This document shows, piece by piece, positions 13,601 to 40,500 of a stretch of 64,000 nt of DNA. Within the stretch, counting starts at the first letter, position 1. Each line of letters opens with the position of its first letter. The notes below the pieces were generated by a model. That model saw only the letters and a program-made list of their open reading frames with translations, was not told the origin of the DNA and did no database searches. The stretch covers positions 3,782,001 to 3,846,000 of the forward strand of contig NW_027266274.1 of NCBI RefSeq assembly GCF_022045235.1. Direction: 5' to 3'. The stretch is from Haliotis cracherodii. Its lineage: Eukaryota. The translations under genes and the position numbers were made by a program.

Positions 13601-16600
13601 TGGAAGAAGATCAGTTCGGGGGCAGCAGAGTTATGGTATGGGGTGAGATTACAGCAAGACAGAGAACCCGTTTGATAGTGGTAGATGTAAATCTCAATGA
13701 AAAGCGCTACCGCGACGAGATCATCGGCCCTGTTGTTCTACCGCTTTTGCGTCGTCATGGCCCAGGCATTACCTTTCAACATGACAATGCCCGGCCTCAT
13801 ATTGCTCGACTAGTTCAGGATTCTCTTCAACAAAACAATGTGAATGTTATCCCCTTGCCAGCATGCTCCCCTGATCTCTCACCAATCGAGCACCTGTGGG
13901 ATGAGATGGATCGGCGCCTTCGACGTCAACCACTTGTTCCACAGACACTCCAGGAACTTCGAAACATGCTCCAGCAAATATGGACAGATATCCTACAGGA
14001 CTTTGTGCGACGCCTGGTCCATTCCATGAAACGAAGATGTGTTACTTGCATCGCAACCAGAGGTGGCCACACGCTATTGATTTGTAAATTGACATTTTGG
14101 CATGTTCTTGTTTTTTTATGAAATAATGCATTTTTTGAAGTCAGTATGGCAAATGAAACCATTTGAACACTTACAGGAGTCTTATATCTGTTGCAAACCG
14201 AAATTGTTTCAGATTTGGTAAAAAATTTAACTTTGCATTAAATCATATTCAATGTCACAGGAACTTTTGTTGCTCAGTATTTAATACTGGTATGGATTCT
14301 ATGTTTGTCAAGAGTATGGCTAGTGGGGATGTGTCAAGTAACCTTGATTTAACATGGATTATATAATTCTAACATTGTAAAATATTTTCCTTTTCAATTT
14401 TAGGGGTGCTTGTTCAATCCATCGTTTCCTCACTGAATATTTACCTAAGAATAATGACCCTTGTCACATTTCGGTTGTTGAAAGAAAGAGTAGTATATTT
14501 TAATCCTTAAATCCCACTCATACAAAGGAAAGTACAGTGTACAAGTGGTCATTGCTAATTGTGGAAAGGAGAATGTCTAAGGGTTAAAAAGGTTGAAGAA
14601 CAGGGTAGCCTTGCTGAGAACGTGTGCAGCAGACCATGACCGTGAATGGAGGCTGGGCTGCTGGAGTGCGATCAAGCGTGTAATTTTGGAGGTAGCTTGT
14701 GCGATCAAGCATGTAATTTTGGAGGTAATTTCCTCCAACATGACCATATATGGACCCTCTGTATATAAAGGTATATTGGTTTGTAAAACACCACTACAAA
14801 TTACACATATCATATTGCATTTATTTATATAAAAAAGATGTCAGCGTAATTGCTAAATATTTTAAATACTCAAAAACATCTTTAACAAATTGAGGCGTTC
14901 TCCAGATATATGATGATAAATTTGAGGAGGAATGTTGACATAGTGCCACATGATGCCCTCCTTATTTTCAACCCTTCACCACCAAGATATCCACAATGTA
15001 CAGGCACACCTTCGTGACTGGGGATAACTGTATATATATGAAAGTTCTTTGATAACTTGATTATTTGATGTACTTTATCAGACAATCTTGCTGGGATGTA
15101 ATACACATCATGGCCTTCATCTGTCCACATGACCTCATACTGTTTAGTAAAGCAGATTGGACATATGTGACCAACCACAAGATAAAAGACCTTGTGGGGA
15201 AAAATCATGTTTTGACTCCTCATTATTTTTTAAAACTAAAGTATCTTAGGACCACAAAAATACAATTCATAACCTTAAATTCATATTTATTACAAATATA
15301 CATGGCATCAAACACATGGACTTATTTTCTGCAAAGTCCTTTTTTCAGAATTATCACTGTTTATGTGATGACTGCAGTTTTCAGATATAATATCTGATTA
15401 ATTGAAATTAGACATGTATGCTGAAATGTTTGGAGACAATGTTTTTATTACATTACTAACTAAAGAGAGAAAAATAAGATATTTTTGTACAGTCCACACA
15501 CATGGCGACTTATACGGAAGTTGGCGTCAAACGTCTTTCCTTATGATGTCCCAGCACAATTGTATCCCAGCACCGATAAGGTCCCTCTTCTCCTGCTGGG
15601 TCACATATGATCCTAGCACCCATAAGGTCCCTCTTCTCCTGCTGGGTCACACATGATCCTAGCACCCACAAGGTCCCTCTTCTCCTGCTGGGTCACATAT
15701 GATCCTAGTACCCATAAGGTCCCTCTTTTCCTGCTGGGTCACATATGATCCTAGCACCCATAAGGTCCCTCTTCTCCTGCTGGGTCACATATGATCCTAG
15801 TACCCATAAGGCCCCTCTTCTACTGCTGGGTCACATATGATCCTACCACCCATAAGGTCCCTCTTCTCCTGCTGGGTCACATATGATCCTAGCACCCATA
15901 AGGTCCCTCTTCTCCTGCTGGGTCACATATGATCCTAGCACCGATAAGGTCCCTCTTCTCCTGCTGGGTCACACATGATCCTAGCACCCATAAGGTCCCT
16001 CTTCTACTGCTGGGTCACATATGATCCTAGTACCTATAAGGTCCCTCTTCTCCTGCTGGGTCACATATGATCCTACCACCCATAAGGTCCCTCTTCTACT
16101 GCTGGGTCACATATGATGTTTGATCATGCCCATGGCCCAAGATCTGTTTCTTTACCTAAGCAAATCAGCTTGGGTCCAAACTTGAGAAAAAGGTTTCCTT
16201 AAAACTTCTTACTCATCCTTCATGACATATTTTAGCCTTATCTATACACTTAGTCTTGTCAGCCCAAAACAGGGAAAATGGGAAAAGTCTTATATGTATT
16301 TGAATGAACATTGATAATGACGCCTAAATGTTTTGCTCATTTTTAGAGTATATATATATCTAGTGGGCTAAAAGGGTCCTTATCAATATCCTACATTGTC
16401 CAAATCTACACATCAATATTTACAACAGGGACATAAAGACAACTGTATAACTTCATTGGAGTATGAACTTTGTACACATCATCACATCATAAAAGTGGCA
16501 TCGTTCCTTGTGCAAACAAGTATGCCATTATTGCAAACAAGTTTGAATTTGTTTTCTGCCTACTGAGAAAGAACATGAATAAACATAGAGCCAAACATTG

Positions 16601-23207: not shown

Positions 23208-26200
23208 TCACTCCTGCACACAATGCTCAGCAGCTTTCATCATGAACTGTTCCCGCCGAAGAATATTCTGGATCTTGTCTTTCTCATCACTGCTCTTACA
23301 CAGGATGACAAAGTGGCTGTCCTTCTTCCTGGCCCGCCCCCGCATCTGTACGAGCGTGGTGACTGTGTTGGGCGGGTTCATGCAGACCACCAGCTCACAC
23401 TCGGGGATATCCACGCCTTCCTCTGCTACAGATGTGGCTACAATGATGTTATACTTCTTGCTCTTCACTCCATCAAGCACCTTCTTCTGCTGCTTCACCT
23501 TCATGCCACCATCAGCCTGACCAGATCCATGGCCAACCACCGATGTGATCTTCAGACTGTTGGCTGATGCAAATTGTGTCTGCTTCAGGAAATTGCTCAG
23601 TCTGTGTGCATGTGCTCGCTCCCGGACGAGAATCAAGGCCATTGCATTTCTGCCAGCTTTCCAGTTGATGTATTTATCATTGGTGAGAGTAGTGAGTAAC
23701 TGTGTGTACAGAGTGATATGAAGAGGGTTGTCATCAAACTCCTGCTGGACATGAGCTGAGTGAGCAGCTCTTCTCATGGCATCTTGCAGCTTTTCACACT
23801 GTATCCCCATCCCCTGAGCGTGCTGGAAGCCACTCTGTGCTGGAGTCTGGTTGAACGTCTGCAGGTCAGCTACAGCTGTGGGTATCCCAACACTGTCCAA
23901 ATCAGACAGCGCAATTAAAAGTATCTTGCAATGATTGACAAGGAAGTCCATATTCATTTTGACTTGTGGTTGCTGGGATTTGGCCTGGCAGTTCCCAAGA
24001 GCTCGGACAAACCTTTCAGTAGCAGCATTGTCCAAGTGCTCTACAAAGTCTTCCAAGTCTTCTCCCTGCATCTTCTCCACTCCAAAATGACAGTCAGTGT
24101 CAATAGTGCACAACTCCGACAGCTTCAAGTAACACTGGCAAATGTACACCAACAGTGTCTTCCGGAAAGCTCTTTCTTCATCCGAAAACGGCTCATAGTT
24201 GATCTTCAGCTTAGCACTGGACTGATACCGCTTCAGTTCTCCCACACAATCACCCTGGACGATGGCAATGCTGGCTCCCCCAAGGTTGTGGAATAACTCG
24301 TGCAGCATGCTGACCGTGCTCTCTACACTGTCGCGCCCTGCAGGGGAGGCGGTCAGACCTAGCACTTTGGGTCTGTGTTCTGGCTGGCACGGGCGGTGGT
24401 ACGCCTCCAGGAGGCGATTGAAGGGGTGATTCTTGACACAGTGATGAGCTTCATCAAATACAACCAGTGAGAAGTCTTCCCAGCGAAGCTGCTGCTTCAG
24501 TAGTAGATTGTCAGCATAGGCTACAACACAGATATACAACAGATATACTACAACACAGATATATCACAGTTAGGCTACAACACAGATATACAACAGATAG
24601 ACTACAACAAGGATATATAACACTGTTAGGCTACAACACAGATATACAACAGATAGACTACAACAAGGATATATAACACAGTTAGTCTACAACACGTTTA
24701 TATCACAGTCTACAACACAGATATATCACAGTTAGCCTACAACACAGATATATCACAGTAAGCCTACAACACAGATATATCACAATTAGCCCACAACACA
24801 GATATATATCAGTTAGCCTACAACACAGATATATGACAGTTAGCCTACAACACAGATATATCACAATTAGCCTACAACACAGATATATATCAGTTAGCCC
24901 ACAACACAGATATATCACAATTAGCCTACAACACAGATATATATCAGTTAGCCCACAACACAGATATATCACAGTTAGCCTACAACACAGATATATATCA
25001 GTTAGCCCACAACACAGATATATCACAATTAGCCTACAACACAGATATGTATCAGTTAGCCTACAACACAGATATATGACAGTTAGCCTACAACACAGAT
25101 ATATCACAGTTAGCCTACAACACAGATATATATCAGTTAGCCTACAACACAGATATATGACAGTTAGCCTATAACAAAGATATATCACAGTTAGCCTACA
25201 GCACAGATATATATCACAGTTAGCCTACAACACAGATATATCACAGTTAGCCTACAACACAGATATATCACAGTTATCCTACAGCACAGAAATATATCAC
25301 AGTTAGCCTACAACACAGATATATCACAGTTAGCCTACAACACAGATATAAATCACAGTTATCCTACAACACAGATATATCACAATTAGCCTACAACACA
25401 GATATTATCACAGTTATCCTACAACACAGATATATATCAGTTAGCCTACAACACAGATATATGACAGTTAGCCTACAACACAGATATATCACAGTTAGCC
25501 TACAACACAGATATATATCAGTAAGCCCACAACACAGATGTATCAGTTAGCCTACAACACAGATATATCAGTTAGTCTACAACACAGATATATCACAGTT
25601 AGCCTACAACACAGATATATATCACAATTAGCCTACAACACAGATATATCACAGTTAGCCTACAGCACAGATATATCACAGTTAGCATAGGTTGATAAGT
25701 GTGAAGAAATAGGGTTTTTAAAAGTTCAAAATTAACAATAGTCGACTAGTTCGAGACAAGTAAAATTCAGGAAGGACAAGTGGCATTTCCTTGTGGACTA
25801 CCACTTTACCATTAAGTAGACTGAGACTAGTCAAACTACAAAATAATTTCTAACACTCCATACATCAAAGAGTTATAGTAAAGTGTTTCCACTTAACAAG
25901 TGTGCAGCATGTACCTGCCGTGCTGACGATGACGTCATGCTTGTAGAGGGGCGTGGTGCCTTGAGGCAGTATGTTCCCACACAGTGTGGCTATTTTCAGC
26001 TCACGCTCCTGCTCCTCCCCATCACTTGTCATGCTGGAAGTAACATGGTATTCTACCATGAATTTGGGAAATACTCAATTCTGATTGGTCAGTCATAGGT
26101 ATCAAATGACAATTACCACCTCTGATTGAAACGGCTGATTTTATTGACCACAAATAGTGAAGTACTTCTTTCTCAGTCACTGTCAGCAGGCATTTTAAAT

Positions 26201-29200
26201 AATTATATGTACAACTATAGCTTATAAAATGCAGGAGCGGTCGGGTAGCCTAGTGGTTAAAGCATCCCTCGTCACCCTGAAGACCCGGGTTCGATTCCTG
26301 ACATTGGTACAATGTGTGAAGCCCGCTGTGATATTGCTCGAATATTGCTAAAAGCAGCGTAACACCATACTCACTCACTTATAAAATGCAGATGTGTGGT
26401 AACTACAACATTCGAAGTATGTGTAGCAACACATTTTGTGCAGAAAACACGATAGAAATTGAGAGAGTATCGTTCAGCTTGAAATTTGAGCTTTTCTATA
26501 GCTGACTGTGACATATTTTCTGCATCACAATGAGTGTGACGTCGTAATAGCGACACGGACTGTAGAACAAAACCTTGCAAGGCTTGAGTACTCTTCTTTA
26601 CGGCTGCCCACTTCATGCTGACTTATGTAATAACTGTGCTACACACTTTGATGCCTTTCGTATATGCAAATCCTTTTTGGTAAAATAATAATGTTGAAGA
26701 ACATTAAGTACCAATATTTGTTTAAAGCAGGGTTAGAGTGAGTGAGTAAGTTGGGTTCAATGCCGCTTTTAACAGTATTCCAGTTATATCACGGCGTGTC
26801 AGCTTAATGTGGGAGGAAAGCCCGAAGTGATGCAGGTCTTAGACGTTTACCACTTCGGCGAAACCCACGAGCACAGGTATGGTGCTGACAAACCTAGAAA
26901 CATAATCGGGGCGAACCGGGATTCGAACCCACGATCATAGGTTTCTGGCGTGCCCAAGGGACGCAACTCTGCACAGCGAATCGCGGCGCCTTAGACGACT
27001 GGGCCACCCGTGCCCCCTACAACAGGGTTAGAACTTAACACTAGCCTGCTAGCCCGGGGCTAGTACAAAGTGCTGTGGGCCAGAACAAATTTCCAAATTT
27101 CCACCTTGTTTTACCCTTACAAGGGCATATTATCCTTACCTCGGCTAGTAATGCTTTATTTTCGGTTCTAACCCTGTAAAGCTGGTATCTGTTACCTCAA
27201 ACATCAAATATTTTCTTTTCTATAGTTACATTTTTTTACATCAAGTTGAAAAGTTGGCATTTGTTATTAAAAGTTTTGTGGTAAAGAGAAACAAGACTAT
27301 ACCTTTTATGTAGCCATAGCAACCAGCAAACTAACAACTCTCAATATGAAAAGCATTTCAGTTTAGTTACCTGTCTGTGTCTGTGTCCCAAACTTTTCTG
27401 TCAACATCATTTTCAGTACATTGTAATGTTAAAATAGCTAACCTAAAGATGTTTTACTGAACTCAGGCATTTGACGAGTGGCTAACGCACAGGCTGATTT
27501 ATGCTAACAAATTCTATTGCATTGACATGCTGGTACATATGGACTTTCTAACCCTTAACATGACTTCAGCACTTCAAGCAGGTCTGTATTCTGTTTCTGG
27601 AGATAAAATCGGTAACAGAATTCTTGTGTGGCAATACTGGATTTGCCCCTCAGTTCACTGATCATGTGACAATGGGCATGCAAAAGGACAAAATAGCTAC
27701 TGTAAAGCATCATTGTCAAGTATATCATGTTGACTTCTTGATAAGGATGCGAAGTCAACGTCCTCCGATGGCCAGCAGGTTACTGACACAATGGGCATGC
27801 AAAAGGACAAAATAGCTACTGTAAAGCATCATTGTCAAGTATATCATGTTGACTTCTTGATAAGGATGCGAAGTCAACGTCCTCCGATGGCCAGCAGGTT
27901 ACTGACACAATGGGCATGCAAAAGGACAAAATAGCTACTGTAAAGCATCATTGTCAAGTATATCATGTTGACTTCTTGATAAGGATACGAAGTCAACGTC
28001 CTCCGATGGCCAGCAGGTTACTGACACAATGGGCATGCAAAAGGACAAAATAGCTACTGTAAAGCATCATTGTCAAGTATATCATGTTGACTTCTTGATA
28101 AGGATGCGAAGTCAACGTCCTCCGATGGCCAGCAGGTTACTGACACAATGGGCATGCAAAAGGACAAAATAGCTACTGTGAAGCATCATTGTCAAGTATA
28201 TCATGTTGACTTCTTGATAAGGATGCTAAGTCAACGTCCTCCGATGGCCAGCAGGTTACTGACACAATGGGCATGCAAAAGGACAAAATAGCTACTGTAA
28301 AGCATCATTGTCAAGTATATCATGTTGACTTCTTGATAAGGATGCGAAGTCAACGTCCTCCGATGGCCAGCAGGTTACTGACACAATGGGACTCAAGCAG
28401 GGTGCAGACAAACTGCACTATCTCCAGCGCATCTTCCTTCTACTACAGAATGGAGGCCATTTTGTAAGGATAGCATATCCTGTGTCACATGATAGCAACA
28501 GGAACAATAGCGGGAGATTTCACTGACCGGAATGTGGATGATAACCGTTAATACATCAATGTCTGAAGTACCTTTACAATGTATACATTAACTCTGTTGG
28601 GCTGAATTCTGCTATATTTCAAAGTGCATTATTTCAAGTGGGAAAAAAGCTCCATATGAAGCAGGTAGTAGACGTTTATCCTCAAGCTTTGGTTACACAC
28701 CAAAGACATTAATTAGGACAAATTATTGACAACAGCCAACAAATAGCTGATCCTTGTATGGCTAGGGGACACAACTATTGAGGGTATCTTACGGCATCAA
28801 CATTCTGGCAAAATATCATATAAGAAGATATAAGTGTCAGTGCATACTGTGACTTTTGTACACAGAAATATACAGAGACTACTTACCGCTTGTACTTCCG
28901 ATTCCCAAGTTCATTGGTGATGTACTTTGACTGCTGCAGCACCAACAACACCTTGTCCACCAGGAACAACACTGGGCGCCGTGGGTTCCGTTGCAGCATA
29001 CAGCTCAGCGTCATCACCGACACCAGCGTCTTCCCAGTCCCTGCAGCAGCAAACATGTCATGTTGCATCGTGACATCTGAGAGTATACAATATCTTATAG
29101 CACAATTAATACTAAAACTAAAGAATGACACAGTCTTCTCCTGATTGAAACAAACGTCGATATCACCAATAAATTCCCTCCCCATGTTTGTTAATGATCA

Positions 29201-32200
29201 GGCAAACATCTTTCAAGAAGCCTTGGTGGCACACAACGGCCTGGAGATATAACACACTGGACAGCTGATGAGGCCAGCATAGTAGTGCAGGTCTTATCTT
29301 TAACATGTTTAAATTAGCACAGTCAAATATTTGTTTCCAATGTATTTGATACAGATACTGGATAATGGGAATGAAACAGTTTTGCAGTATGAAGATTTAA
29401 AGAAAACAGCAGTGTTAGAAACATACATTTTTAGTCCATTAGTCCTTATAATTATAACATATAGCAAAACCCTTAAAAATGGCAAATTTCTATTTATCCT
29501 TATGATGCCTTAATTATTGGGCAGTTTGGCAAGGAGTACAGGACTAGTACCAATTTCTAATGCTGAAGTGTTGAAGGAGAAAACCACTGACTCACCTGTT
29601 GGCAAGAAGATGACCTTGTCGCCTTCCATGGTTTTGCAGAACAGATCCACCTGGTAGCTGCGAGGCATGGTGTTGGTCACATGATAGGCTGCTTCCTCTG
29701 CATCATCGATACTGAGCACCCTCTGTATCTGTCCCAGGTTCACCCGGGGAGCCTCCACTTCCGCTGCCTGCTGTTGATGAGCTCGACTCTGCAGGTGAGC
29801 CTGGTAGTCTTTATCTGTGTTCATCGGCCGATTACAGATGTCACAGTAAAATTTGTAATATCCACCAAAAGGGTTCTTTGGTGGCACCTTTGGTATTGCA
29901 CCTATACCAACATGGCCAATGAGCAGCTCAAAATTAGAGGATGGACAGATACTTGACTCAGCATCTGTCAGGAGAGATATGTTTCTATCTTGTCTTGGAG
30001 CTATGGAGTGGTTGTGATCAGTGGTACTGGAGCCCATAGAAACATGTGGTCCATCATTGAGAATACTGCTAGCATTTGTGTTGTAACTGATTAAACTGTC
30101 AGCCTCACCACCAGGCAGGTCATCATCCAATGGCAATGTCTTACTTCGAGAAGATTCTTCTTCATCTGAATTCAGGTTTTCAAACACATCAAGAGGAACT
30201 TTATTTCCTCTGTGTCGGACAGTGGTCTGGTTTTTTAGCGGGTTGTGAGTGCTGGGTCGCCTACTTCCACCTGATCCCTTGACATTATCTTGGAAGTCAT
30301 CAGTGTCTCCAACGTCGGTAGATGTCGGTTGAGTGATCGCTGCTGTTCTCATCCTCAGAGGCATCGCATCTGTTGTGGTAATGGTTGGGTTGACAATGGT
30401 GGATCCCCTGCCCATGACTAGTTTGGCCAATGAAGTGCTTTTGAAAATAACATTTCTTGAAGGAGTTATTTCTGTGTTAATTCTATTGTCCTTGGAAACC
30501 GTTTCCTCGGCTGCAGCAGACATTCCTGGGCTTCGTTCTCGCTCCGTGCTAAGTGTTTTGCTGGCACTATTTGTACTTGATAACTTTCTCACACCCGAAC
30601 CAGCTTCACTCACTCTTGTAGACTGTCTCCCATCAGTATCAAGATGTTCCCAGTGTCCGACTAGATCGGAACTGACATTTGATGCTGTAGTGATAGGAAC
30701 ACTCCTGGAAATTGAAGAGATTATTTCCTTCACTTCAGTATTTGGAGTTATGCCTTTGACTGCAGTGACTTCTCCTGTACGAAGAGCTTCCCAGACATCC
30801 TTGTAGCTCCCTTGCTTGGATTCCGTCTTGTCCTGACTATCTTCAACACTAGACCCTCTGCTATTTTCATCACCATAAGCCGATAGAGCCACAGCGACAT
30901 ATCGCTGCTTCTTTTCCACAGTCTGTAGATGCTTGGGACTTTTCTTATGGATTGACAACTGTTCAAATGAGTTCACTTGGCACTGGCATACCTCACACAC
31001 ATACATGTTTCGTGGGGAGTGGCCTACCGAGTTCTCTCTGCCTGCTGAGTACAGGCCCCCAGCTTCTATCCCGACCGGATCCAAGGAACCCTTGGTCAGC
31101 CCTGCCTTGCTTATATGTTTGGCAGAGGCATAATGCTGTGCAGCACTTTCTTGTCCACTGAATGACTTGAGACAAACCTTACACTGGAGTGACAGTATCC
31201 CATTCTGGTTGATCATCTTCCTCTTTTCCTCAGCCCTGGCGTGACTCCGACCTTGAAGGTGCTGGGTGGCATGCTGTGGAGATGTCAGCTCTATGTTACA
31301 AACAAAGCATCGGCCTCTTCCACCAGTAAACACATACGCTGGCTCCTCCATCGCATCACCAGGCTGGGACACTCCAGAAGAAGGGTCTCTATGTGCATCA
31401 ACTGCATCAACCAAATTCAATCTCTGTACAGCCTTTTCATGTGGTTTCCCTGCTAAGTGTTGACTAGCATGTGCCTTAGAGGTAAGTTCAATGTTACACA
31501 CATTGCAGAAGCCTCTCATTCCATCGAACTCGTAAAGCCTTCGTTCTGCAGACTCCTTTGATTCCTCATGTCTGTTTGTTGCTTGCCATCGTGCTAAAGC
31601 ATTTGTGTGATTCTTACCATTGAGATGCTGTTGTGCATGTTGAGAAGACGTTAGTTCGATGCTGCAGACGTTACACCATCCTCTGTTGCCATCAAACCGA
31701 TATGGTGTCTGAGGACTGGTAGATGGTTTGACACCAGCTGTTCTCTCACTGACATCAGGACCATTGTTGACCAAAACATCACCAGTACCTGCTGAATGCA
31801 AGCCTTTAGCTTTCGCATGCTTCTTACCACTAAGGTGTTGGTTCGCATGTTCACGAGACGTCAGTTCAATTTTGCAGATGTTACATCGTCCAGTGCTCCC
31901 ATAAAAAATATATTCCTGTTCTTCTGTTACGTTTTCTTGAGACAAAGGAGTTCTTTGCATTTGTGTATTCTCTGATGAATTGTTAGAATTATTACCATCA
32001 GTAATGTGGGGGAAATGTTGATTGACCATGTTTAGATTTTGTAGACATGAATAGCTACCCAGAATTGGAACATCTGTCAAAGTTCCTCCATGAACAGATA
32101 AACACAGACTACCTTCATTCTGATTACTTACAGTCAGTGGCAAATAGCCTGTTGGCCCAGCTGAATATGTCAGTTTGTTTTCGTTGGGAAGCATAATTTG

Positions 32201-33541
32201 AGCTAAACTTGGAGCTTTTGGAAACTGACTCACTTTTGGTTCTGTCAAAGAATTAGACTCCGGCTGGATGTTCATTGGCAGGCAGGTCTGAACGGTAGCA
32301 CCTGGAGTTGCAAGTGGGTTATTTACCAAGGTCATTTTCTGGGAAAGCTGCGGTTTCTCCTGCTCCTGAAGTGTGAAATTTGTTTTGGGCAGCTGTGACC
32401 TCTTCTTGTGTCTATCACTGTCAAAGTGTTGCTGGGCACTCTCAGGGCCGGAGAATACAACATTACACAAGTCACATTTGAGCACCTCACTGGCAGATTG
32501 TCCTAATTTCCATTGCTTCTCTGCTTTCTTATGTCGGGATCCATCAAGATGTTGCTGGGCATTTTGAGGAGATGTAAAATCCACATGACAGACATTGCAG
32601 TAACCCTCCTTTCCATCGAAAGTATAAGGAACATTGTATTCATTACCATCACCAGAACTAGTTTTCACAGTATCAGACACTGACATGTTTCCAACTAGAG
32701 TAGAACTAGTTGTCAGTAATGGTGCCATTGTTTGACTTGGTCTAGTTTCAGGCATAGAACTACTGTTGCTGTAAACTGGGACATCAGCAAACAGTCCAGT
32801 ACCTGTCTCTGAGGGGGATATTCCCAACCTTGTAGGGGCGTTACTTGGCTGTGAGATGTTTGAAACACCATACAGGGGAGAGCTACTGTTGAAAACATTG
32901 TCCTGTCCCTCCATCTCTCTCTTCTTCTTCAAGTGCTTTGCACTTGCAAGATGTTCCTGAGCATTGCCAAGACTGGTAAATGGTACATTGCAAATCTGAC
33001 ACTTCAACACATTGGTGTTGTCCTCTCCAGCCTCCATCTGTTTTTGTTTCTTCTGATGTTTGGATCCACTGAGATGTTGCCGGGCATGTTGTGGAGAGGT
33101 CAAGTCAATGTCACAGAGATGGCAATAACCTCTAGAACCATTAAAGTCATATTCCTTTCTTGCGGTTTCACTGGACATCTTGAAAGGTACTGTCTGGTTA
33201 AGCCCCTGTGTGGGACTGCTACCGACATGCTGTACCCTCCCAGAAAGGAGAGGGTTTTGAACTGGTGTTGCAGCTTGGTATGCGAAACCTAAACTTCTTC
33301 TTACAATCTCTTTGTGTCTAGGGCTGACAATGTGTTGTTGAAACTGTTCAGCTGTGTTACATTGGACATTGCATGGGTCACACCAGTATGTTCTTGTGTT
33401 TCCCTGAAACACTGAATTTTTAATCTGGTCTTCTTTTTTCCTGTGAGCCTCACTGATGAAATGCTGCTGAGCTGATAGAGCACCACTAAATTGCTTTGAA
33501 CAAATAACACAGTAAAGTGGAACCTCTTGTTGGCTGCTCAT
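23208..33541 (-). CDS. Multi-zinc-finger (13x matrin/U1/JAZ-type C2H2) RIG-I/Dicer-family DExD/H-box RNA helicase, ~1843 aa; coding exons 33541-29596, 29040-28887, 26033-25915, 24520-23208
   Basis: Exon phases join without a break (5532 nt = 1844 codons). There are 13 C-x2-C-x12-H-x5-H fingers, then Q motif PRSYQ, Walker A LPTG|TGKT (split by an intron), Ia LFLVDKVLLVLQQ, II DEAHH, III GLTASP, a helical Hel2i-like insert, IV LILVRER, V ATSVAEEGVDIPEC and VI QMRGRAR. The stop follows about 35 aa later. Confidence 0.9.
24521..25686. repeat. 25-29-bp minisatellite (~40 copies) in the last intron of the helicase gene
   Basis: Unit CTACAACACAGATATATCACAGTTAGC. It abuts the splice acceptor at 24521. 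Confidence 0.95.
26234..26380 (+). mobile_element. tRNA-derived SINE (short copy)
   Basis: A-box-like TAGCCTAGTGG, B-box GGTTCGATTCC and an (ACTC)n tail. No intact cloverleaf. Confidence 0.75.
26737..27018 (-). mobile_element. tRNA-derived SINE
   Basis: The minus strand begins GGGGGCACGGGTGGCCCAGTCGTCTAAGGCG, has B-box GGTTCGAATCCC after a long spacer, then a non-tRNA body and an (ACTC)n-like tail. Confidence 0.7.
27667..28390. repeat. 119-bp tandem repeat, 6 near-identical copies (helicase intron)
   Basis: ACAATGGG recurs every 119 bp from 27669 to 28383. Confidence 0.97.
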
Positions 33542-33724
33542 CTCTGCTCAACAGATAGCTAAATCATCTAGAAAAGATATTCAGTTTAGTACAATTCCTG
33601 TTGAAAGTGATTATCCTTTGGCTGTATAGTCCTAAGCAATATGTTGCACACAGTTGTTCGCTGCGTCGTTAATCACACCACGATCACATTTCTAATTTTA
33701 GCATCACCGGGAATACCAACTTAC

Positions 33725-33780
33725 TTTCTTTCGACGTTCGTGTGAGACAATATTCAAAGGGAGCGTTTTTGTCAGGTGAT
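33725..33780 (-). other. Putative non-coding first exon of the zinc-finger helicase gene (5' end approximate)
   Basis: Consensus donor AAA|GTAAGT (intron starts at 33724) pairs with acceptor TTTTCTAG at 33568, 26 nt before the ATG. Confidence 0.5.
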
Positions 33781-33791
33781 GATAGTCAATA

Positions 33792-33878
33792 CGTGACGTG
33801 TGTACAAGGTCTATTCCTGGAAATACGGACAACACCATGTGAAACCTGAATAGGGGATTCCCCTAGTATGACGTCATA
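33792..33878. promoter_or_regulatory. Cluster of immune transcription-factor motifs (GAS/STAT, NF-kB, CRE/ATF) upstream of the helicase gene
   Basis: TTCCTGGAA at 33814-33822, GGGGATTCCCC at 33853-33863, TGACGTCA at 33869-33876 and a CRE-like TGACGTG at 33794-33800. Confidence 0.65.
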
Positions 33879-34557: not shown

Positions 34558-37500
34558 ATGGCCGCCAGTGAAAAGGTAAGAGCGGAGCATATGTGTGAAA
34601 TGCAGATATTTTGCTGGAGACACATGATATTTTGACATTTTCATTTATGTCAGCAACTTTTGGACCCAACATTTTAACGGAAATTCCTCTTTATCAGGGT
34701 AATATCATTGGGACAGTTTAGATGACAGTACATCATTAGGCCTAATATCCATAAACAAATCTGAAAATGAATGAAAAGGTAAGCTTGGTGATAGCATAGT
34801 TTATCAAACAAAATGTGTATTTACCGTTCTGTCATTCTGTAGAACTGTTGGCTATTAGTCTTGATCATCCGAACCTAATGGCTCTAGCATTCATTACATC
34901 TTGTTTATTGATTGTTGACTGTGCATGTAGAATATATGTTGCTGACTAGATGATCCACTTTTTTCAACAGGTTTTGAAACAGCTCTTAAGCAATAGAAGG
35001 ATCAGAAAAGATAAAGATGTAGAAGAGCTCTACCTTTCTGACAAGTGAGATTACTTATTTTCAAAGATACAGAATAGGATTTGCACTAAGAATGTATTTT
35101 GTATATGACCCTGTTTTTTTCTTTACTTTGTCTGTCCCTGCCCTTTATAATTACCCTTAGTATCTATTATCCAACATAAGAATTAAAAGAATCTTAAATA
35201 CCCTTATGCCTCCATTTCACTTCGACCACGAATATCCCGAATCACCCTGAACAGGAAAAGTTTTATGTTCGTAGATAATCATTTCTTGAAGTTCTTAAAT
35301 GAATCTTATTTTTTTTCCCAAACATTCGTACAGTTTGTGGGAGTTCTTCAAATCGGCAAGAAAGTTTTTGTTTGTCAAAAACTTTCGTGAAAGGGTCCCC
35401 AAATTGCAATTTTGTGGCTGTATCGTAATCCTTTCGTAATTAATTTTTATGTTCCATAACAGCTTCGTAATTCATTCTTTTGCATTCTTGGCTATTCTTA
35501 GCTATTCATGGCTCCAAAAATGTCTTGTCCTCAACCAAAAAACATCCCAAAACAGCCATGAATGTCCTGAGTCAACTACAAATCATGCAAGAATTAAGTA
35601 AGAACAACGTGCGGCATATTTGTAACTTAGTCGTAGGTGATTCTTACAATTCGTGCATGATCCGTACATGAATCATGTAATTCATATATGTTTCTTAACC
35701 CATTCCTGGCATTCTTAATATTTTTCAACCCGATTAGCCACGAAAGTTGGCATTATTAGCTGATTCATCACGAATTTCAAAAGTTTCCGATTCAGGGTTA
35801 TTCGGGATGTTTGTTTCATAGTGAAAGGGGGGCATGACCCAATATACAACTCGGCTTATGCATCACTGTATTATACTGTCTGCAACCTAGCATGTTTGTG
35901 CATGGCTGATAATTAACAGTGGTAAAATATGAATAATAATGTAATTAAATTAAACAAAGGTAAGACTTCCACGCATATCCCCCCCTAAAAAATATATATG
36001 ATTAAAAGGAATGAGTGACAATGCATACATATATTACTTTTGGAGAGGGATACAGGCTTAAGTCTTTACAAAACTATATCTTTATTTATGAATGTGAAAG
36101 TAATTTCAATCTGAAATATTTATATATTGTGTTGCAAATCTCTGCCTCTCTGGCCTGATGGCCCTGCATAGTGACACCTAAATCTGTGAGGACATCCTTA
36201 AACATGATATAACTGAACTTCCATTTGTGCAATTGGCAAAACAAACTTGTAAGAAGGGACTCAGATGACATTGGACTGTCTCTGTGGTCTAGTGTAGAGC
36301 GTCCTTTAGTCCATACATGATATTGTTTTATGGTGTATTGTAAGATACCAAGTGATTTCCTGCATGTTAACGATGACCTTATCCTAGGAACTGTGTATAT
36401 ACCACCAGATCAAAGTAGATTTCATTCACCGGAAATATTTACAACACTAGAAAATGATATCATTCGTATGTCAAACTGCTCACAGTACATGTGTATTAAT
36501 GGTGATATGAATTGTCGTACTAAAAATCTACCGGATTTTATCATTTTGGACGAATATTTATGTGACAATGATATTATTGACGAGGAATTTTTGTTTTCAA
36601 ATGTACAACTTCTAGTTGACAACGATGTAAAGTTAGATAGAATATCAATGGATACTGAAACAAACTGTAACGGGTATAATTTCCTGGATTTATGTAAAAG
36701 TAACGGATTGTATATTGTAAATGGGAGATTAGGCAAAGACAAGGGTATTGGTAAACTGACCTGCAGAAATGCCAGTGTTGTCGATTATTGTATTGTATCA
36801 GCAGAAACATTCCCATTATTAATAGATTTTGAGGTGCAGGAGTTTGACCCGATCTCGTCCGATGTACACTGCTTATCGTTAACGTTAGATTGTACAGCAC
36901 AACAACTGTCTCCAGTTATAGATGATGACAAAGATGTACATGTACATAAAGTTGTAAAAAGATGGATTCCTGATAAAATTGAAGCATTTTTACGTAATAT
37001 CGATAATGTTGCCATTACCCATCTGTGTACAGAATTAGATGCATGTAAAGACCAAATAGAGCCAAATGACATTAAACAAATTGTAAATAAACTCTCTCAG
37101 ACGCTGGTTACTGCGGCTGAAACTACTCTAGGTGCTGTAAAAAATTCAAGACACTCTGTACATAAGCACAAGCATAAACCCTGGTTTGATGAAAAATGTA
37201 AATCATCACGTAGATTTTACCACAAGCGTAAATGTATATATGGAAGGACTAAAGACAGTAATAGCAAAGCTATGTACATTTCAGCTAGTAGAGCTTATAG
37301 TAAAACCGTAAAGAAGGCATTTAAGACATATCAAAACAAATGTGTCCAACAACTGAGGGAATGTAAGGATAGTAACCCTAAGAATATTTGGGAAATTTTA
37401 AAATCATTTGAACCAAAGAAAACAGCAGAAAAAATTAGTATGGACAAATTGTTTGAATTTTTTAAAGATCTTAATCAAAGTTCTGATGATAATGACAATG

Positions 37501-40500
37501 TTTTTGCCAATAACATAAATTATGATAATCATGATGATATCTTAGATTGTAGGATTACAAAAGAAGAAATTATGTCAGCGATCCGTGCATTGAAGAACAA
37601 TAAGGCTTGTGGGTTGGATGGTATTTACAATGAGTACATTAAAAGCTCTATTCATGTTATGATGCCGGTTTACGTAAGGCTTTTTAACCTCGTTTTTGAC
37701 ACTGGAGTTTCACCTGAAGCTTGGCTTGTTGGCAAAATAAAACCAATCTACAAAAACAAAGGAAACCAAGCTGACCCAGACAATTACAGAGGCATTCTAT
37801 CCTGAGCTGTTTAGGTAAATTGTTCACTACACTATTGAATAATCGTTTACAAGCTTACTCAGTTCAGACTAATCTAATAAGCGAAGCGCAAGCAGGATTT
37901 AGAAAAAAATACTTTTTACAATTGACAATATGTTTATTCTTAAAGCTCTCATTGATGTCTATAGAAATCTTAATAAGAAGTTGTATTGTGTTTTCGTCGA
38001 TTTTAGCAAAGCTTTTGATACAGTATGGAGGTGTGGTCTGTGGACAAAAAATGATAAAGTCTAATATCAAAGGAAAATGTTTTAATGTCATATATAATAT
38101 GTATCAAAATATGAAATCTTGTGTTTCACATAATAACAAGGTGTCAGGTTTCTTCCCATGTCAAATTGGTGTAAGACAAGTTGAAAATGTGTCACCTTTC
38201 CTGTTTGCTTTGTACCTTAATGACCTTGAACAATGATTTTGAAGGACTGCATAATGTAATAACCTTTTAATAGATTCACTTGAACTGTTAAAAAACCTTT
38301 TTCTCATTTTGTATGCCGATGATACTGTTTTAATGGCCGAAAGCCTAGAAGATTTAAGAAAGTGCCTCACTATATTTGAAGAATATTTCACTATCTGGAA
38401 ACTTAAAGTCAATCTTGACAAAACGAAAGTTGTTATTTTTGCCAAGCGCTCCACAAATAGTCTTCAGTTTTATGTCAAATGGCTCGATTTTTCATGTTGT
38501 TAAAGAATATGTTTACCTTGGTATTTTATTTACAAACACTGGTAGATTTTGTAAGGCCCTAAAAAGACTGACAGATCAGGCATCTAGAGCAATGTACGCT
38601 GTATTTCGTAAAATTAGAATATTAGAAATTCCTATTGACTGTCAACTGAAATTATTTGATCAACTTGTTCAGCCAGTATTGTTATATGGATCTGAGGAGT
38701 GGGGTTTTGAAATTGCTATTGTAATTGAACGTGTACATCTTAAATTTTGTAAATATATTCTCAAGTTAAAACAGTCAACACCTGATTACATGGTATATGG
38801 TGAACTAGGTAGGTATCCTCTCAGCATTTTCATCAAGATAAGAATGATTTCATATTGGTGCAAGCTAACATCATCACCAACTAGCCTTTCTAGTATAGTA
38901 TATAAACTTATGTTTCAAATGTCCTTTGCAAATCCAGATTACCATTTCCCACTATTAAAAGAAGTAAAATGCATTCTTCAAAATATAGGCTTTAATTACA
39001 TTTGGTTGTCTCAAACCTTTACTAGTGCCGCATGGTTGAAACAAAATGTGAAACATGTTCTCATTGATAATTTTCTGCAAAGATGGTGAGAATCAAAGGA
39101 AAATTCATCTAAAGGTTACTATTATAACATGTTTAAAGAGTTACCATCCCTAGAACCTTATTTCCTAGAACTACCAATCACCTTACGCATCTCTCTTGCA
39201 CGTTTTAGAACAGCAAATCATAGATTACTCATTGAAACAGGAAGATGGTATAATATTGTAAGAGAGGAAAGAAAATGTACATTGTGTAAAAATTTAATAT
39301 GTGATGAAATGCACTTTTTATTAGAATGTCCAAAACTCTCAGAAATTAGAAACAAGTTTTTGCCTCAATTCTACTGTATGTATCCTTCTGCCATAAATTT
39401 CTCTCATTTGATGTCCATTACTTATAAGCCAATTCTATTAAAACTGGCAAGTTATATAAGATCATGTATGGAAATGTTCCACAGACATGTTTTCTCCTAT
39501 TGTATCTAATTCCTGTATCCAATTACATCTCTGTATCACTGCCGTGATTTACGAGAATAAACATCATTCATTCATTCATAAGTACCGTTAATGCATTCAC
39601 TGTATTGTCTGGTATCTCAAGTAGCTAAAGACAGCTGAACACAGACACTGTAACATGTTGTCTTTCTTCATTCAGCGCACAGGGGGGGGGGGGGGAGGGT
39701 GTATTGACTTGGTGCTTACTACAAATAACTAAATATTTGAAAGTTTTCTCAAGTTTTAGTTACTTGTGAATACATACCTCTATGATAATGAAGGATAAAA
39801 TTTTGAACTTATTATCAATGACAATGTAGTTGTTTTGTTTTATTTGCGAACATCAGTTAGCGCTTGTCTGCAGATTTTGTTTGTTTGTTTAACGCCACAC
39901 TCAGCAATATTCCAGCTATATGACTGCCGTCTGTAAATAATCAAGCCTGGACCCGACAATCCAGTGATTGACATGAGCATCGATCCACGCAATTAGGATA
40001 CAATGACATGCATCAACCAAGTCAGCGAGTCTGACCAACCAATCCCATTAGTTGCCTCTTACGACAAGTTTAGTCGCCTTTTATGGTAAGCAAGGGTTTC
40101 TGAAGACCTTTTCTACCCCGGATCTTCACATCTGCAGAAATTATGACGTGTAAACATGAGCAGATATAGGGTCCTTGCAGACTTTGCTGACGCAGCTGTA
40201 ACACAAATAATTGATCAGTTGCAAGGAATATATAACTTACTATATAGTACACAAAGATAGGAACGTCATTATCTAATATAAAACATACATTAATGTTTTT
40301 GCAAGGAATTTATCTTCCAATACTGAACAAGAAATGAATATACTCAAACCTAAGGTGTTTTCTCCTTTAATTGTGCTAATGGTAAAATCTTTGTTACAAA
40401 TGTCATCTTGATGACAAACTTATATGATTCCATAAAATTGAGTGGACCTTTCATGATATTCAATGGTATCATTGGCATGCATTAGTACTGACTGATAAGC

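What the first reader, a model, noticed from the sequence alone, without database searches (positions are those of the whole stretch)
23208..33541. RIG-I/Dicer-type helicase fused to 13 dsRNA-binding-type zinc fingers, with no CARD, CTD or RNase III domain: candidate undescribed dsRNA sensor or effector
Seen: four in-phase exons join a 3.9-kb zinc-finger exon to a complete SF2 helicase with all motifs intact (PRSYQ, LPTGTGKT, DEAHH, GLTASP, ATSVAEEGVDIP, QMRGRAR) and a Hel2i-like insert. Walker A is itself split across the finger exon and the next exon, so the fusion is not a joining artefact. Known: these motif variants are typical of the RIG-I/MDA5/LGP2, Dicer and DRH family. Widely spaced C-x2-C-x12-H-x5-H fingers are the type that binds dsRNA in JAZ/ZNF346, ZMAT3/Wig-1, ZFR and dsRBP-ZFa. 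Canonical RLRs instead carry N-terminal CARDs and a C-terminal RNA-binding CTD, and ZNFX1 uses different fingers and an SF1 helicase. Inference: the finger array replaces the CTD or a dsRBD cofactor, like a fused DRH-1/RDE-4 pair, giving multivalent and possibly length-dependent dsRNA recognition in invertebrate antiviral defence or RNAi. I do not recognise this architecture as a characterised family, but I cannot search databases.
Basis: partly seen in the sequence, partly recalled or inferred. Interest (0 to 1): 0.92.

Follow-up and report, generated by a model that had tools for sequence, protein, structure and literature searches.

The report
Zinc-finger array fused to Dicer-type helicase
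This abalone gene really does join 13 double-stranded-RNA-type zinc fingers to an intact Dicer/RIG-I-class helicase, and it belongs to an old, animal-wide but unstudied family whose nearest studied relative is an RNA-interference regulator of slime moulds.

Summary
Four minus-strand exons (33541-29596, 29040-28887, 26033-25915, 24520-23208) join through GT-AG introns in phase. Each exon's translation matches the 1843-aa RefSeq protein XP_071104399.1 ("uncharacterized protein", Haliotis cracherodii) exactly. Pfam finds 13 zf-met/JAZ-type fingers and an SF2 helicase. It finds no CARD, RIG-I CTD, PAZ or RNase III domain.

The gene is single-copy here, but it is not an abalone oddity. Finger-plus-C-terminal-helicase proteins occur in gastropods, bivalves, cephalopods, a brachiopod, a flatworm, hemichordates, a crinoid, sponges and corals. 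The coral proteins also carry a Z-alpha domain. All are unnamed or misnamed.

In trees rooted on archaeal Hef the family is one clade (99/98). It lies outside the RLRs (AU p = 0.002) and outside Dicer. It is nested among amoebozoan dsRBD-helicases (HelF-like) and helicase-RdRP fusions.

A model of a congener's helicase (pLDDT 87) shows Hel1, a helical Hel2i-like insert, Hel2 and one C-terminal helix. Its best matches are RIG-I, MDA5 and ancestral Dicer helicase bound to dsRNA.

Best reading: a dsRNA-binding, ATP-driven HelF-like helicase in which the fingers take the place of dsRBDs. I found no paper describing it. The scan had earlier noted only the promoter motif cluster upstream (s1-834492).

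The parts
23208..33541 (-). Whole coding region of the gene. It encodes the 1843-aa protein XP_071104399.1 through 4 coding exons.
   Evidence: Each exon's translation matches P0157 exactly. The gene is single-copy in the genome.
29596..33541 (-). Coding exon 1 (3946 nt). It encodes residues 1-1315 plus the first base of G1316: all 13 fingers, the Q motif and the first half of Walker A.
30929..33511 (-). Fingers 1-12 (residues 11-871). Each is C-x2-C-x12-H-x5-H. Several sit in pairs 18-20 residues apart, and six are of the type Y-x-F-x-G-x2-G-x-C-x2-C-x-I/V-x-L/F-T-S.
   Evidence: Regex positions. Pfam zf-met finds 13 stretches. ZFa and ZNF346 are the only PDB matches. The fingers are 90.3% identical to H. 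asinina, against 67.2% for the inter-finger sequence.
29846..30928 (-). Finger-free linker rich in Ser and Thr (residues 872-1232). It is probably disordered.
   Evidence: Composition is S 14% and T 10%. Identity to H. asinina is 69.8%. No Pfam match.
29777..29845 (-). Finger 13 (residues 1233-1255), the finger next to the helicase. It ends 37 residues before the Q motif.
   Evidence: It gives the best-scoring zf-met and zf-C2H2_jaz stretches. Where it could be measured (32 of 40 members), the distance from last finger to Q motif was 29-49 residues in 30, from sponges to molluscs.
29651..29665 (-). Q motif PRSYQ (residues 1293-1297), the start of the helicase core.
29041..29595 (-). Intron 1 (GT..AG). 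It splits Walker A (LPTG|TGKT) inside codon G1316.
28887..29040 (-). Coding exon 2 (154 nt): the second half of Walker A and Hel1 strands (residues 1316-1367).
   Evidence: (ResIII E 6e-4).
26034..28886 (-). Intron 2 (GT..AG).
25915..26033 (-). Coding exon 3 (119 nt), residues 1367-1407 of Hel1.
24521..25914 (-). Intron 3 (GT..AG). Its 3' end holds three tandem copies of TATATCTGTGTTGTAG.
23208..24520 (-). Coding exon 4: the rest of Hel1 (DEAHH, TAS), the Hel2i-like insert, Hel2 (motifs IV-VI), a terminal helix and the stop codon.
24441..24455 (-). Motif II DEAHH (residues 1429-1433), followed by CVKNHPFN. This is the Dicer/RLR-type extension.
   Evidence: The residues are invariant in the 34-sequence family alignment.
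23682..24182 (-). All-helical insertion domain (about residues 1520-1686), Hel2i-like.
   Evidence: AlphaFold model of the H. rubra orthologue (84% identical): helices at residues 281-446, pLDDT mostly 84-95. It aligns with RIG-I, MDA5 and Dicer helicases over about 500-580 positions.
23298..23639 (-). Hel2 RecA-like domain (about residues 1701-1814) with ATSVAEEGVDIP and QMRGRAR.
   Evidence: Helicase_C E 1.3e-17; model.
23214..23291 (-). Single long C-terminal helix (about residues 1817-1842). It corresponds to the first pincer helix of RLRs. The protein ends here, with no CTD.
   Evidence: Helix 577-602 in the model. The RIG-I alignment reaches chain residue 771. The tail after motif VI is 39 residues here and 39-60 in 35 of the 37 members where it could be measured.

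Best explanation
The locus is one intact, single-copy protein-coding gene of the black abalone. Its product has an N-terminal array of 13 JAZ/ZFa-type zinc fingers separated by fast-evolving, probably disordered linkers. [quoted passage not shown] By descent it is neither an RLR nor a Dicer. It belongs to a distinct, metazoan-wide family, which is itself nested in the clade holding amoebozoan dsRBD-helicases (HelF-like) and the helicase domains fused to RNA-dependent RNA polymerases. The steps below are inferred, not shown. The fingers bind A-form dsRNA without sequence preference, as in ZFa and ZNF346, and their number gives avidity that grows with duplex length. The conserved finger about 37 residues before the Q motif places the helicase on the same duplex. 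dsRNA then stimulates ATP hydrolysis, which drives translocation along the duplex or its remodelling. With no nuclease and no CARD or death-type signalling domain, the protein's output must go through partner proteins or through the remodelling itself. It would then act as an effector or regulator of dsRNA metabolism, as HelF is for RNAi in Dictyostelium, rather than as a self-contained receptor.
For: Gene model: GT-AG junctions in phase and exact identity to a RefSeq model.

Fusion in single transcripts of relatives: the Oscarella member is an ORF of one Trinity transcript. Logan contigs of about 5.0-5.4 kb encode full 1435-1738-aa members and leave no room for introns.

Fingers: Pfam zf-met and zf-C2H2_jaz. 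ZFa (E 2e-5) and ZNF346 (E 7e-4) are the only PDB matches. The fingers are the best-conserved part of the protein among abalones.

Helicase: catalytic motifs are invariant across 34 family members. Motif II has the Dicer/RLR-type extension. Foldseek's top hits are dsRNA-bound RIG-I (E 4.8e-25), ancestral Dicer helicase, MDA5, LGP2 and DRH-1. VIA-align gives Z 27.8 to RIG-I.

Phylogeny (IQ-TREE careful, 59 sequences, 521 columns, support as UFBoot/SH-aLRT): family 99/98; family plus the Balamuthia dsRBD-helicase 99/87; plus the HelF-like clade 98/91; plus the RdRP-fused helicases 93/82; RLR 99/98; Dicer 100/98. The 103-sequence quick tree and the 206-sequence FastTree give the same picture. The AU test rejects family+RLR as one clade (p 0.002).

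Domain context of relatives: dsRBDs in the sister clades, a Z-alpha domain in the coral members and RdRP fusions. All of these are dsRNA-related partners.

HelF itself is a dsRBD plus helicase protein. Its loss makes Dictyostelium hypersensitive to RNAi (PMC4894637 and PMC2175303).
Against: No biochemical or expression data exist for any member. The junctions could not be checked against RNA reads in this species. Fingers of the zf-met type also occur in proteins that bind DNA, ssRNA or ribosomes. By fold alone the FANCM translocase scores nearly as well (Z 25.6 against 27.8), and by sequence Hef scores like RIG-I (98 bits each). The RNA assignment therefore rests on phylogeny, the motif II signature and the partner domains. 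The link between the HelF/RdRP/finger supergroup and Dicer is weak (64/55). Eukaryotic FANCM/Mph1 and few animal Dicers were in the tree; AncD1D2 stood in for animal Dicer. Molluscs reportedly lack DICER2 and siAGO (PMC11114477), so a classical siRNA role like HelF's is doubtful in this lineage. The HelF-like label of P0074 rests on matching length and domain positions, not on a name look-up.
Confidence: 0.6

Rival explanations
1. It is an RLR-like cytosolic sensor. The fingers and helicase recognise viral dsRNA, and the long linkers recruit unknown adaptors that switch on an NF-kB/IRF/STAT-type antiviral programme, so the finger region replaces both CTD and CARDs.
For: The fold is closest to dsRNA-bound RIG-I and MDA5. 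Coral members add a Z-alpha domain, which is known from ADAR1 and ZBP1 (that knowledge is mine, not tested here). Perfect kappaB-type, GAS-type and CRE palindromes lie about 275-335 nt upstream of the ATG. Abalones reportedly lack MAVS and have divergent RLRs (PMC11103948), which leaves room for other sensors. Molluscs lack DICER2 and siAGO.
Against: No signalling domain was found by Pfam. The helicase is not in the RLR clade. The linkers evolve fast (67-70% identity between abalones), which is unexpected for adaptor docking sites. The promoter motifs are untested matches, and kappaB-type matches are not enriched in the window (12 found against 6 expected).
Confidence: 0.2
2. It works in a small-RNA pathway as a helicase acting in trans with Dicer or an RdRP, as DRH-1 and RDE-4 do with DCR-1 in C. 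elegans or as the helicase on Dictyostelium RdRPs does. Alternatively it brakes such a pathway, as HelF does.
For: Its nearest relatives are HelF-like proteins and helicase-RdRP fusions. Its catalytic motifs are intact, while the molluscan DICER1 DECH box is reported to be diverged.
Against: Molluscs are reported to lack DICER2, siAGO and an endo-siRNA signature. No RdRP match was found in this genome, though that search was inconclusive.
Confidence: 0.15
3. It is a nuclear factor for DNA, for RNA:DNA hybrids or for RNA processing. On this view the fingers act as matrin-type nucleic-acid binders and the motor as a FANCM/Hef-like translocase.
For: The FANCM fold match is nearly as good as RIG-I (Z 25.6). 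The NCBIfam Hef model aligns over the whole core (154 bits). Short basic clusters such as KKKR follow some fingers. HelF is described as nuclear, in the title of Popova et al. 2006 as cited.
Against: There is no ERCC4 or HhH domain. Motif II is of the Dicer/RLR type, not the Hef type. FANCM scores far below Dicer and RLR by sequence (55.6 against 98-122 bits). The genome has a separate FANCM-like locus on contig 45.
Confidence: 0.05

Closest known systems
Dictyostelium HelF and other amoebozoan dsRBD-helicases (e.g. Balamuthia 'Dicer-like protein 1')
   Same: Both are stand-alone Dicer-class helicases with no nuclease and no CTD, and with dsRNA-binding modules N-terminal of the motor. They are the nearest helicase clade (98/91 and 99/87) and give pairwise scores of 166-189 bits, against 95-129 bits for Dicer and RLR.
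   Different: HelF has one to three dsRBDs where this family has zf-met/JAZ fingers (2-13 of them). The amoebozoan proteins are far shorter (about 780-1100 aa). HelF's role as a suppressor of RNAi is known only in Dictyostelium.
RIG-I-like receptors (RIG-I, MDA5, LGP2, DRH-1)
   Same: They share the Hel1-Hel2i-Hel2 core and the first pincer helix and give the best fold matches (Z 25-28 over about 500 residues). The DExHH..K motif II signature is also shared.
   Different: This protein has no RIG-I_C-RD domain and no CARDs. It ends 39 residues after motif VI. It lies outside the RLR clade (AU p 0.002).
Dicer helicase domain (animal Dicer, AncD1D2, fungal and plant DCLs)
   Same: AncD1D2 is the best PDB sequence match (122 bits). 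The DEAHH.VKNHP[FY] motif is shared. The two lie on the same side of the tree relative to the RLRs (94/77 for the wider group).
   Different: This protein has no Dicer_dimer, PAZ or RNase III domain. It lies outside the Dicer clade (100/98). Here the helicase is C-terminal, whereas in Dicer it is N-terminal.
JAZ/ZNF346, Xenopus dsRBP-ZFa, ZMAT3/Wig-1 (dsRNA-binding zinc-finger proteins)
   Same: The finger spacing and the long linkers are the same, and the same Pfam families match. ZFa and ZNF346 are the only PDB sequence matches to the finger exon.
   Different: Those proteins have 3-7 fingers and no enzymatic domain. Here 13 fingers are tethered to an ATPase.
Helicase-RdRP fusion proteins (Dictyostelium RrpA-C type; Macrostomum RdRP)
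   Same: Their helicase belongs to the same supergroup (93/82).
   Different: They carry a C-terminal RdRP domain and no fingers.

Membership tests
RIG-I-like receptors | DExD/H core with a Hel2i insertion and a pincer | tested here: met
   The AlphaFold model of the congener has Hel1, an all-helical insert, Hel2 and one terminal helix. Z is 27.8 to RIG-I. Only the first pincer helix is present.
RIG-I-like receptors | C-terminal RIG-I_C-RD (CTD) domain | tested here: not met
   There is no PF11648 match. The protein ends 39 residues after motif VI.
RIG-I-like receptors | Helicase falls inside the RLR clade | tested here: not met
   The RLR clade (99/98) excludes it. The AU test rejects family+RLR as one clade, p 0.002.
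RIG-I-like receptors | N-terminal CARD or death-fold signalling domain (RIG-I/MDA5 type) | tested here: not met
   No such Pfam match in exon 1 at E up to 1.
Dicer | Dicer_dimer, PAZ and two RNase III domains | tested here: not met
   None was found by Pfam.
Dicer | Helicase falls inside the Dicer clade | tested here: not met
   The Dicer clade (100/98), which includes AncD1D2 (P0116, identity checked), excludes it.
HelF-like / RdRP-associated Dicer-type helicases | Helicase groups with these proteins | tested here: met
   With Balamuthia 99/87, with the HelF-like clade 98/91 and with the RdRP fusions 93/82. Quick tree of 103 sequences: 77-86 SH-aLRT.
HelF-like / RdRP-associated Dicer-type helicases | N-terminal dsRBD (dsrm) domain | tested here: not met
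   There is no dsrm match; zf-met fingers take its place.
HelF-like / RdRP-associated Dicer-type helicases | Modulates RNAi | not testable with these tools
   This needs genetics or biochemistry.
FANCM / Hef DNA translocases | C-terminal ERCC4 nuclease and HhH domains; Hef-type motif II (DEAHRAxGNYxY) | tested here: not met
   There is no ERCC4 or HhH match. Motif II reads DEAHHCVKNHPFN. FANCM scores 55.6 bits, against 98-122 for RLR and Dicer.
JAZ/ZFa-type dsRNA-binding zinc fingers (PF12171 / PF12874) | C-x2-C-x12-H-x5-H fingers with long linkers that score above Pfam's cut-offs | tested here: met
   All 13 fingers have the exact spacing. zf-met scores 234.8 bits and zf-C2H2_jaz 159 bits. 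ZFa and ZNF346 match in the PDB.
JAZ/ZFa-type dsRNA-binding zinc fingers (PF12171 / PF12874) | Binds dsRNA | not testable with these tools
   This needs binding assays.
ZNFX1 | SF1 (UPF1-like) helicase with NFX1-type fingers | tested here: not met
   The helicase is SF2 of the Dicer/RLR class, and no NFX1 finger match was found.

The most novel reading that the evidence does not exclude
The family is the animal branch of an ancient stand-alone Dicer-type helicase lineage (HelF-like) in which dsRBDs were exchanged for JAZ-type fingers at the root of Metazoa. In molluscs DICER2 and siAGO are reported lost and the DICER1 helicase motif is reported degenerate. There the finger array has grown to 6-13 units, and the protein has become the main catalytically intact Dicer-side dsRNA motor. 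It would act as a multivalent sensor or effector that measures duplex length in a dsRNA response unlike both canonical RNAi and CARD-based RLR signalling.
Probability: 0.25. Interest if true: 0.8.

Novelty: new variant of a known kind. Interest (0 to 1): 0.68.

Why it matters
Reviews usually describe animal dsRNA helicases of this class as two groups, Dicer and the RIG-I-like receptors. This gene represents a third group. It is well supported in the trees and found from sponges to molluscs and hemichordates, yet none of the roughly 45 named members I saw comes from a vertebrate, insect or nematode, which would explain why it has not been studied.

Its accessory domains (dsRNA-type fingers, Z-alpha in corals, dsRBDs and RdRPs in sister clades) all point to dsRNA. 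Molluscs mount strong poly(I:C) responses (my own knowledge, not checked here), and some lack MAVS or canonical siRNA machinery. In these animals the family is a concrete candidate for the missing dsRNA handler.

It also gives a natural test of whether tandem dsRNA-binding zinc fingers can replace a CTD or dsRBD in loading a translocating helicase.

Tried and rejected
**RNA evidence.** No read-level check of the junctions or of expression was therefore possible.

**Joined model.** All full-length work used the database protein P0157, which equals the exon translations piece by piece. The structure was predicted for the H. rubra orthologue P0286, which is 84% identical, because P0157 exceeds the length limit.

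**Unfinished tree.** The careful IQ-TREE search on 103 sequences did not finish after about 1150 s. Its quick tree was used, and a 59-sequence careful tree was run instead.

**ESM Atlas.** The Atlas gave only generic archaeal and eukaryotic helicase clusters and had no structure for this protein. It was uninformative.

**RdRP.** The search of this genome found nothing, but the control rang nowhere, so the result is inconclusive.

**Literature.** Searches by architecture, by Pfam name and by 12 accession or locus names found no description. The lophotrochozoan RLR survey never mentions zinc fingers and traced RLR history through RIG-I_C-RD among other domains, so it probably missed this family. 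The HelF paper PMC1360742 is not held.

**Readings rejected.**
- A gene-model artefact: ruled out by the exact RefSeq match and the conserved architecture in more than 40 species.
- An RLR in the strict sense: ruled out by the tree and the AU test.
- A helicase split off from animal Dicer: AncD1D2 sits in the Dicer clade.
- ZNFX1-like: that protein has the wrong helicase superfamily.

Full report
**1. The observation**

The region holds a minus-strand gene with four coding exons. Exon 1 (33541-29596) opens with ATG, and an in-frame TGA lies 9 nt upstream. It runs for 3946 nt as one ORF.

The three introns have canonical boundaries: CAG|GTGAGT...CTGCAG|G, GCG|GTAAGT...TTCCAG|C and GCAG|GTACAT...GTTGTAG|CC.

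Instead I matched each exon's translation to a protein returned by the homology search. P0157 is XP_071104399.1, "uncharacterized protein [Haliotis cracherodii]", 1843 aa. It contains the four pieces exactly at residues 1-1315, 1317-1366, 1368-1406 and 1408-1843, with G, R and A between them. H. rufescens has a 1843-aa orthologue (LOC124142913). H. asinina has one of 1841 aa. The gene is single-copy in this genome.

**2. Domains**

Pfam finds 13 zf-met stretches (E 2e-71) and zf-C2H2_jaz (E 1.9e-47) in exon 1. It finds a weak ResIII match in exon 2, and Helicase_C (E 1.3e-17) plus the end of DEAD/ResIII in exon 4. On full-length orthologues ResIII and DEAD pass their cut-offs. Nothing matches CARD, RIG-I_C-RD, PAZ, Dicer_dimer, RNase III or dsrm.

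All 13 fingers have the identical spacing C-x2-C-x12-H-x5-H. The only solved proteins whose sequence matches the finger exon are Xenopus dsRBP-ZFa (E 2e-5) and human ZNF346/JAZ (E 7e-4). These are the two classic dsRNA-binding zinc-finger proteins.

Between H. cracherodii and H. asinina the identities are:

| Segment | Identity |
|---|---|
| Fingers | 90.3% |
| Helicase | 83.8% |
| Long linker (872-1232) | 69.8% |
| Inter-finger sequence | 67.2% |

The fingers are thus the most constrained part of the protein, and all 13 are kept in H. asinina.

**3. The helicase**

By sequence, the whole protein scores as follows against solved structures:

| Structure | Bits |
|---|---|
| Ancestral animal Dicer helicase (AncD1D2) | 122 |
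| MDA5 | 99 |
| RIG-I | 98 |
| Archaeal Hef | 98 |
| Plant DCL1 | 97 |
| FANCM | 56 |

Sequence scores alone therefore do not place it. Motif II with its extension reads DEAHHCVKNHPFN, like Dicer (DECHHAVKNHPY) and the RLRs (DECHHT.K..YN). Hef reads DEAHRAVGNYSY.

The full abalone protein is too long for the structure tool, so I modelled the H. rubra orthologue's helicase-only database entry. This is P0286, 603 aa, 84% identical with a single one-residue gap. I supplied a 34-sequence family alignment. The model has pLDDT 87.3 and pTM 0.79. It shows Hel1, an all-helical insertion of about 165 residues, Hel2 and one long terminal helix.

Foldseek's best matches are dsRNA-bound RIG-I (E 4.8e-25), ancestral Dicer helicase, MDA5, LGP2 and DRH-1, over about 580 alignment columns. 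VIA-align gives Z 27.8 for RIG-I, 27.4 for MDA5, 26.1 for LGP2, 25.6 for FANCM and 25.4 for DRH-1. The fold confirms the three-domain architecture with a Hel2i-like insert, but it does not by itself separate RNA motors from DNA motors.

The catalytic residues (DEAHH, TASP, QxxGRxR) are invariant in the family alignment.

**4. The family**

An exhaustive HMMER search with exon 4 found 75 cluster representatives at E up to 1e-30. Many are long proteins with the helicase at the extreme C-terminus. Name look-ups and Pfam scans show the same finger-plus-helicase architecture in these groups:
- Gastropods: Haliotis, Gigantopelta, Lottia, Babylonia, Nucella, Batillaria, Aplysia, Biomphalaria, Physella, Candidula, Elysia and Plakobranchus.
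- Bivalves: Mytilus, Argopecten, Saccostrea, Mercenaria, Dreissena, Ruditapes, Mya, Mactra, Solemya, Potamilus and Sinanodonta.
- Cephalopods: Octopus and a Sepia-like cluster.
- Other phyla: the brachiopod Lingula, the flatworm Macrostomum, the hemichordates Ptychodera and Glandiceps, the crinoid Antedon, and the sponges Oscarella and Corticium.
- The coral Montipora, whose protein also carries a Z-alpha domain.
- A nemertean (Lineus) has the helicase and regex-level fingers, but Pfam does not recognise the fingers.

Sources call these proteins "uncharacterized", "dicer-like protein 1", "dicer 2-1", "DHX58-like" or "RIG-I-like". None of the named members came from a vertebrate, arthropod or nematode, though that is not proof of absence.

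Three features are conserved across the family:
- The last finger ends 29-49 residues before the Q motif in 30 of the 32 members where this could be measured.
- The tail after motif VI is 39-60 residues in 35 of the 37 members measured, so no member has room for a CTD apart from a probably mis-fused Dreissena model and one unnamed Logan sequence.
- Finger number is 2-6 outside molluscs and mostly 6-13 in gastropods and bivalves.

Transcript-level support for the fusion exists in relatives. The Oscarella protein is an ORF of a single Trinity transcript. Several full-length members of 1435-1738 aa sit on Logan contigs of only 5.0-5.4 kb, which leaves no room for introns. That these contigs are cDNA-derived is my inference.

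**5. Phylogeny**

I cut the helicase cores with a family HMM. I labelled sequences by partner domains, using small HMMs, regexes and Pfam spot checks.

The 206-sequence FastTree, the 103-sequence IQ-TREE quick tree (LG+C20 PMSF) and the 59-sequence careful tree, all rooted on archaeal Hef, agree. In the careful tree the supports (UFBoot/SH-aLRT) are:

| Grouping | Support |
|---|---|
| Finger family, roughly following the species tree | 99/98 |
| Family plus a Balamuthia dsRBD-helicase | 99/87 |
| The above plus a clade of dsRBD-helicases | 98/91 |
| The above plus helicases fused to RdRP | 93/82 |
| RLRs | 99/98 |
| Dicers | 100/98 |

The Dicer clade includes P0116, which I verified to be the AncD1D2 sequence. 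Both the Dicer and the RLR clades exclude the family. The link from the supergroup to Dicer is weak (64/55).

Forcing family plus RLR into one clade costs 37.4 log-likelihood units and is rejected (p-AU 0.002). Pairwise HMMER scores give the same order: family 245-425 bits, dsRBD/RdRP helicases 166-189, Dicer 127-129, RLR 95-115 and Hef 94.

One dsRBD-helicase (P0074, 836 aa; dsrm 3-75, helicase 230-683) matches the published layout of Dictyostelium HelF (837 aa; dsRBD 2-76, DEXDc 228-431, HELICc 608-687; PMC4894637). I could not confirm its name. Deleting helF makes Dictyostelium hypersensitive to RNAi. Dictyostelium Dicers lack the helicase domain, which sits on the RdRPs instead (PMC2175303).

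**6. Interpretation**

Shown here:
- The gene is real, intact and conserved.
- The architecture is ancient.
- The helicase is of the Dicer/RLR class but belongs to a third, HelF-like lineage.
- The fingers are of the dsRNA-binding type and are under the strongest constraint.

Inferred:
- The fingers bind dsRNA multivalently.
- The proximal finger positions the motor.
- dsRNA stimulates ATP hydrolysis and translocation.
- Output goes through partners or through remodelling of the duplex.

The partner domains seen in this helicase lineage (dsRBD, Z-alpha, RdRP, JAZ fingers) all deal with dsRNA. This is the strongest argument for an RNA role rather than a DNA role.

Which pathway it serves is open. 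A HelF-like role in RNAi fits the phylogeny. However, molluscs are reported to lack DICER2, siAGO and endo-siRNA signatures, and to have a diverged DICER1 DECH box (PMC11114477).

**7. Novelty**

I found no paper on this architecture, searching by architecture terms, Pfam names and accessions. The lophotrochozoan RLR survey never mentions zinc fingers and traced RLR history through RIG-I_C-RD among other domains, so it probably did not see these proteins. The library does not cover subscription journals.

I rate this a new variant of a known kind. It is a Dicer/RLR-class helicase lineage with a new, conserved accessory module. It is already present in databases but unnamed and unstudied.

**8. 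Limits**
- The structure is of an 84%-identical congener.
- The trees lack eukaryotic FANCM/Mph1 and have few animal Dicers.
- Many tree tips are unnamed metagenome or transcriptome proteins.
- The RdRP search in this genome was inconclusive.

Noticed in passing
window 33814-33876 (minus-strand gene; about 275-335 nt upstream of the ATG): Three perfect palindromes lie within 63 nt: TTCCAGGAA (GAS/STAT type), GGGGAATCCCC (kappaB type) and TGACGTCA (CRE). CRE octamers number 5 in the window against 0.71 expected. kappaB-type matches number 12 against 6 expected.
   Followed up: partly
window 33559-33725: A possible 5' UTR intron: donor AAA|GTAAGT at 33725/33724 and acceptor TTTTCTAG| at 33568/33567. 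A three-codon uORF, ATGATTTAG, follows just before the main ATG. No RNA data were available to confirm either.
   Followed up: no
window 24521-24600: Three tandem copies of about 16 nt (TATATCTGTGTTGTAG) sit at the 3' end of intron 3 and offer several candidate AG acceptors. The annotated model uses the last one.
   Followed up: no
window 53871-55169 (+): A single 432-aa ORF matches PIG-V mannosyltransferase (PF04188, E 1.6e-83). It is a neighbouring and apparently intronless GPI-anchor biosynthesis gene.
   Followed up: partly
window 13558-14121 (+): A 187-aa ORF matches a DDE_3 transposase (E 6.8e-11). It is probably a transposon remnant.
   Followed up: no
window 36330-39509 (+): A run of four long ORFs (491, 138, 237 and 126 aa) lies in an AT-rich stretch. 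The two I scanned (491 and 237 aa) had no Pfam match. Their nature is unknown.
   Followed up: partly
related proteins P0269, P0050, P0397 (corals): Coral members of the family carry a Z-alpha (ADAR-type) domain N-terminal of the finger and helicase. An unrelated protist helicase of the same supergroup (P0471) has Z-alpha plus a dsRBD.
   Followed up: partly
G000 contig 45, 19270686-19292322: Exon-sized matches to the Hef/FANCM profile (positions 10-152 and 415-481) suggest that the abalone's own FANCM gene lies there, separate from this locus.
   Followed up: no
related proteins P0014 (Dreissena) and P0182 (Lineus): The Dreissena model has a 520-aa tail after motif VI, unlike the 39-60 aa of almost every other member, and may be a fused gene model. 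Lineus has eight regex-level fingers that Pfam does not recognise.
   Followed up: no
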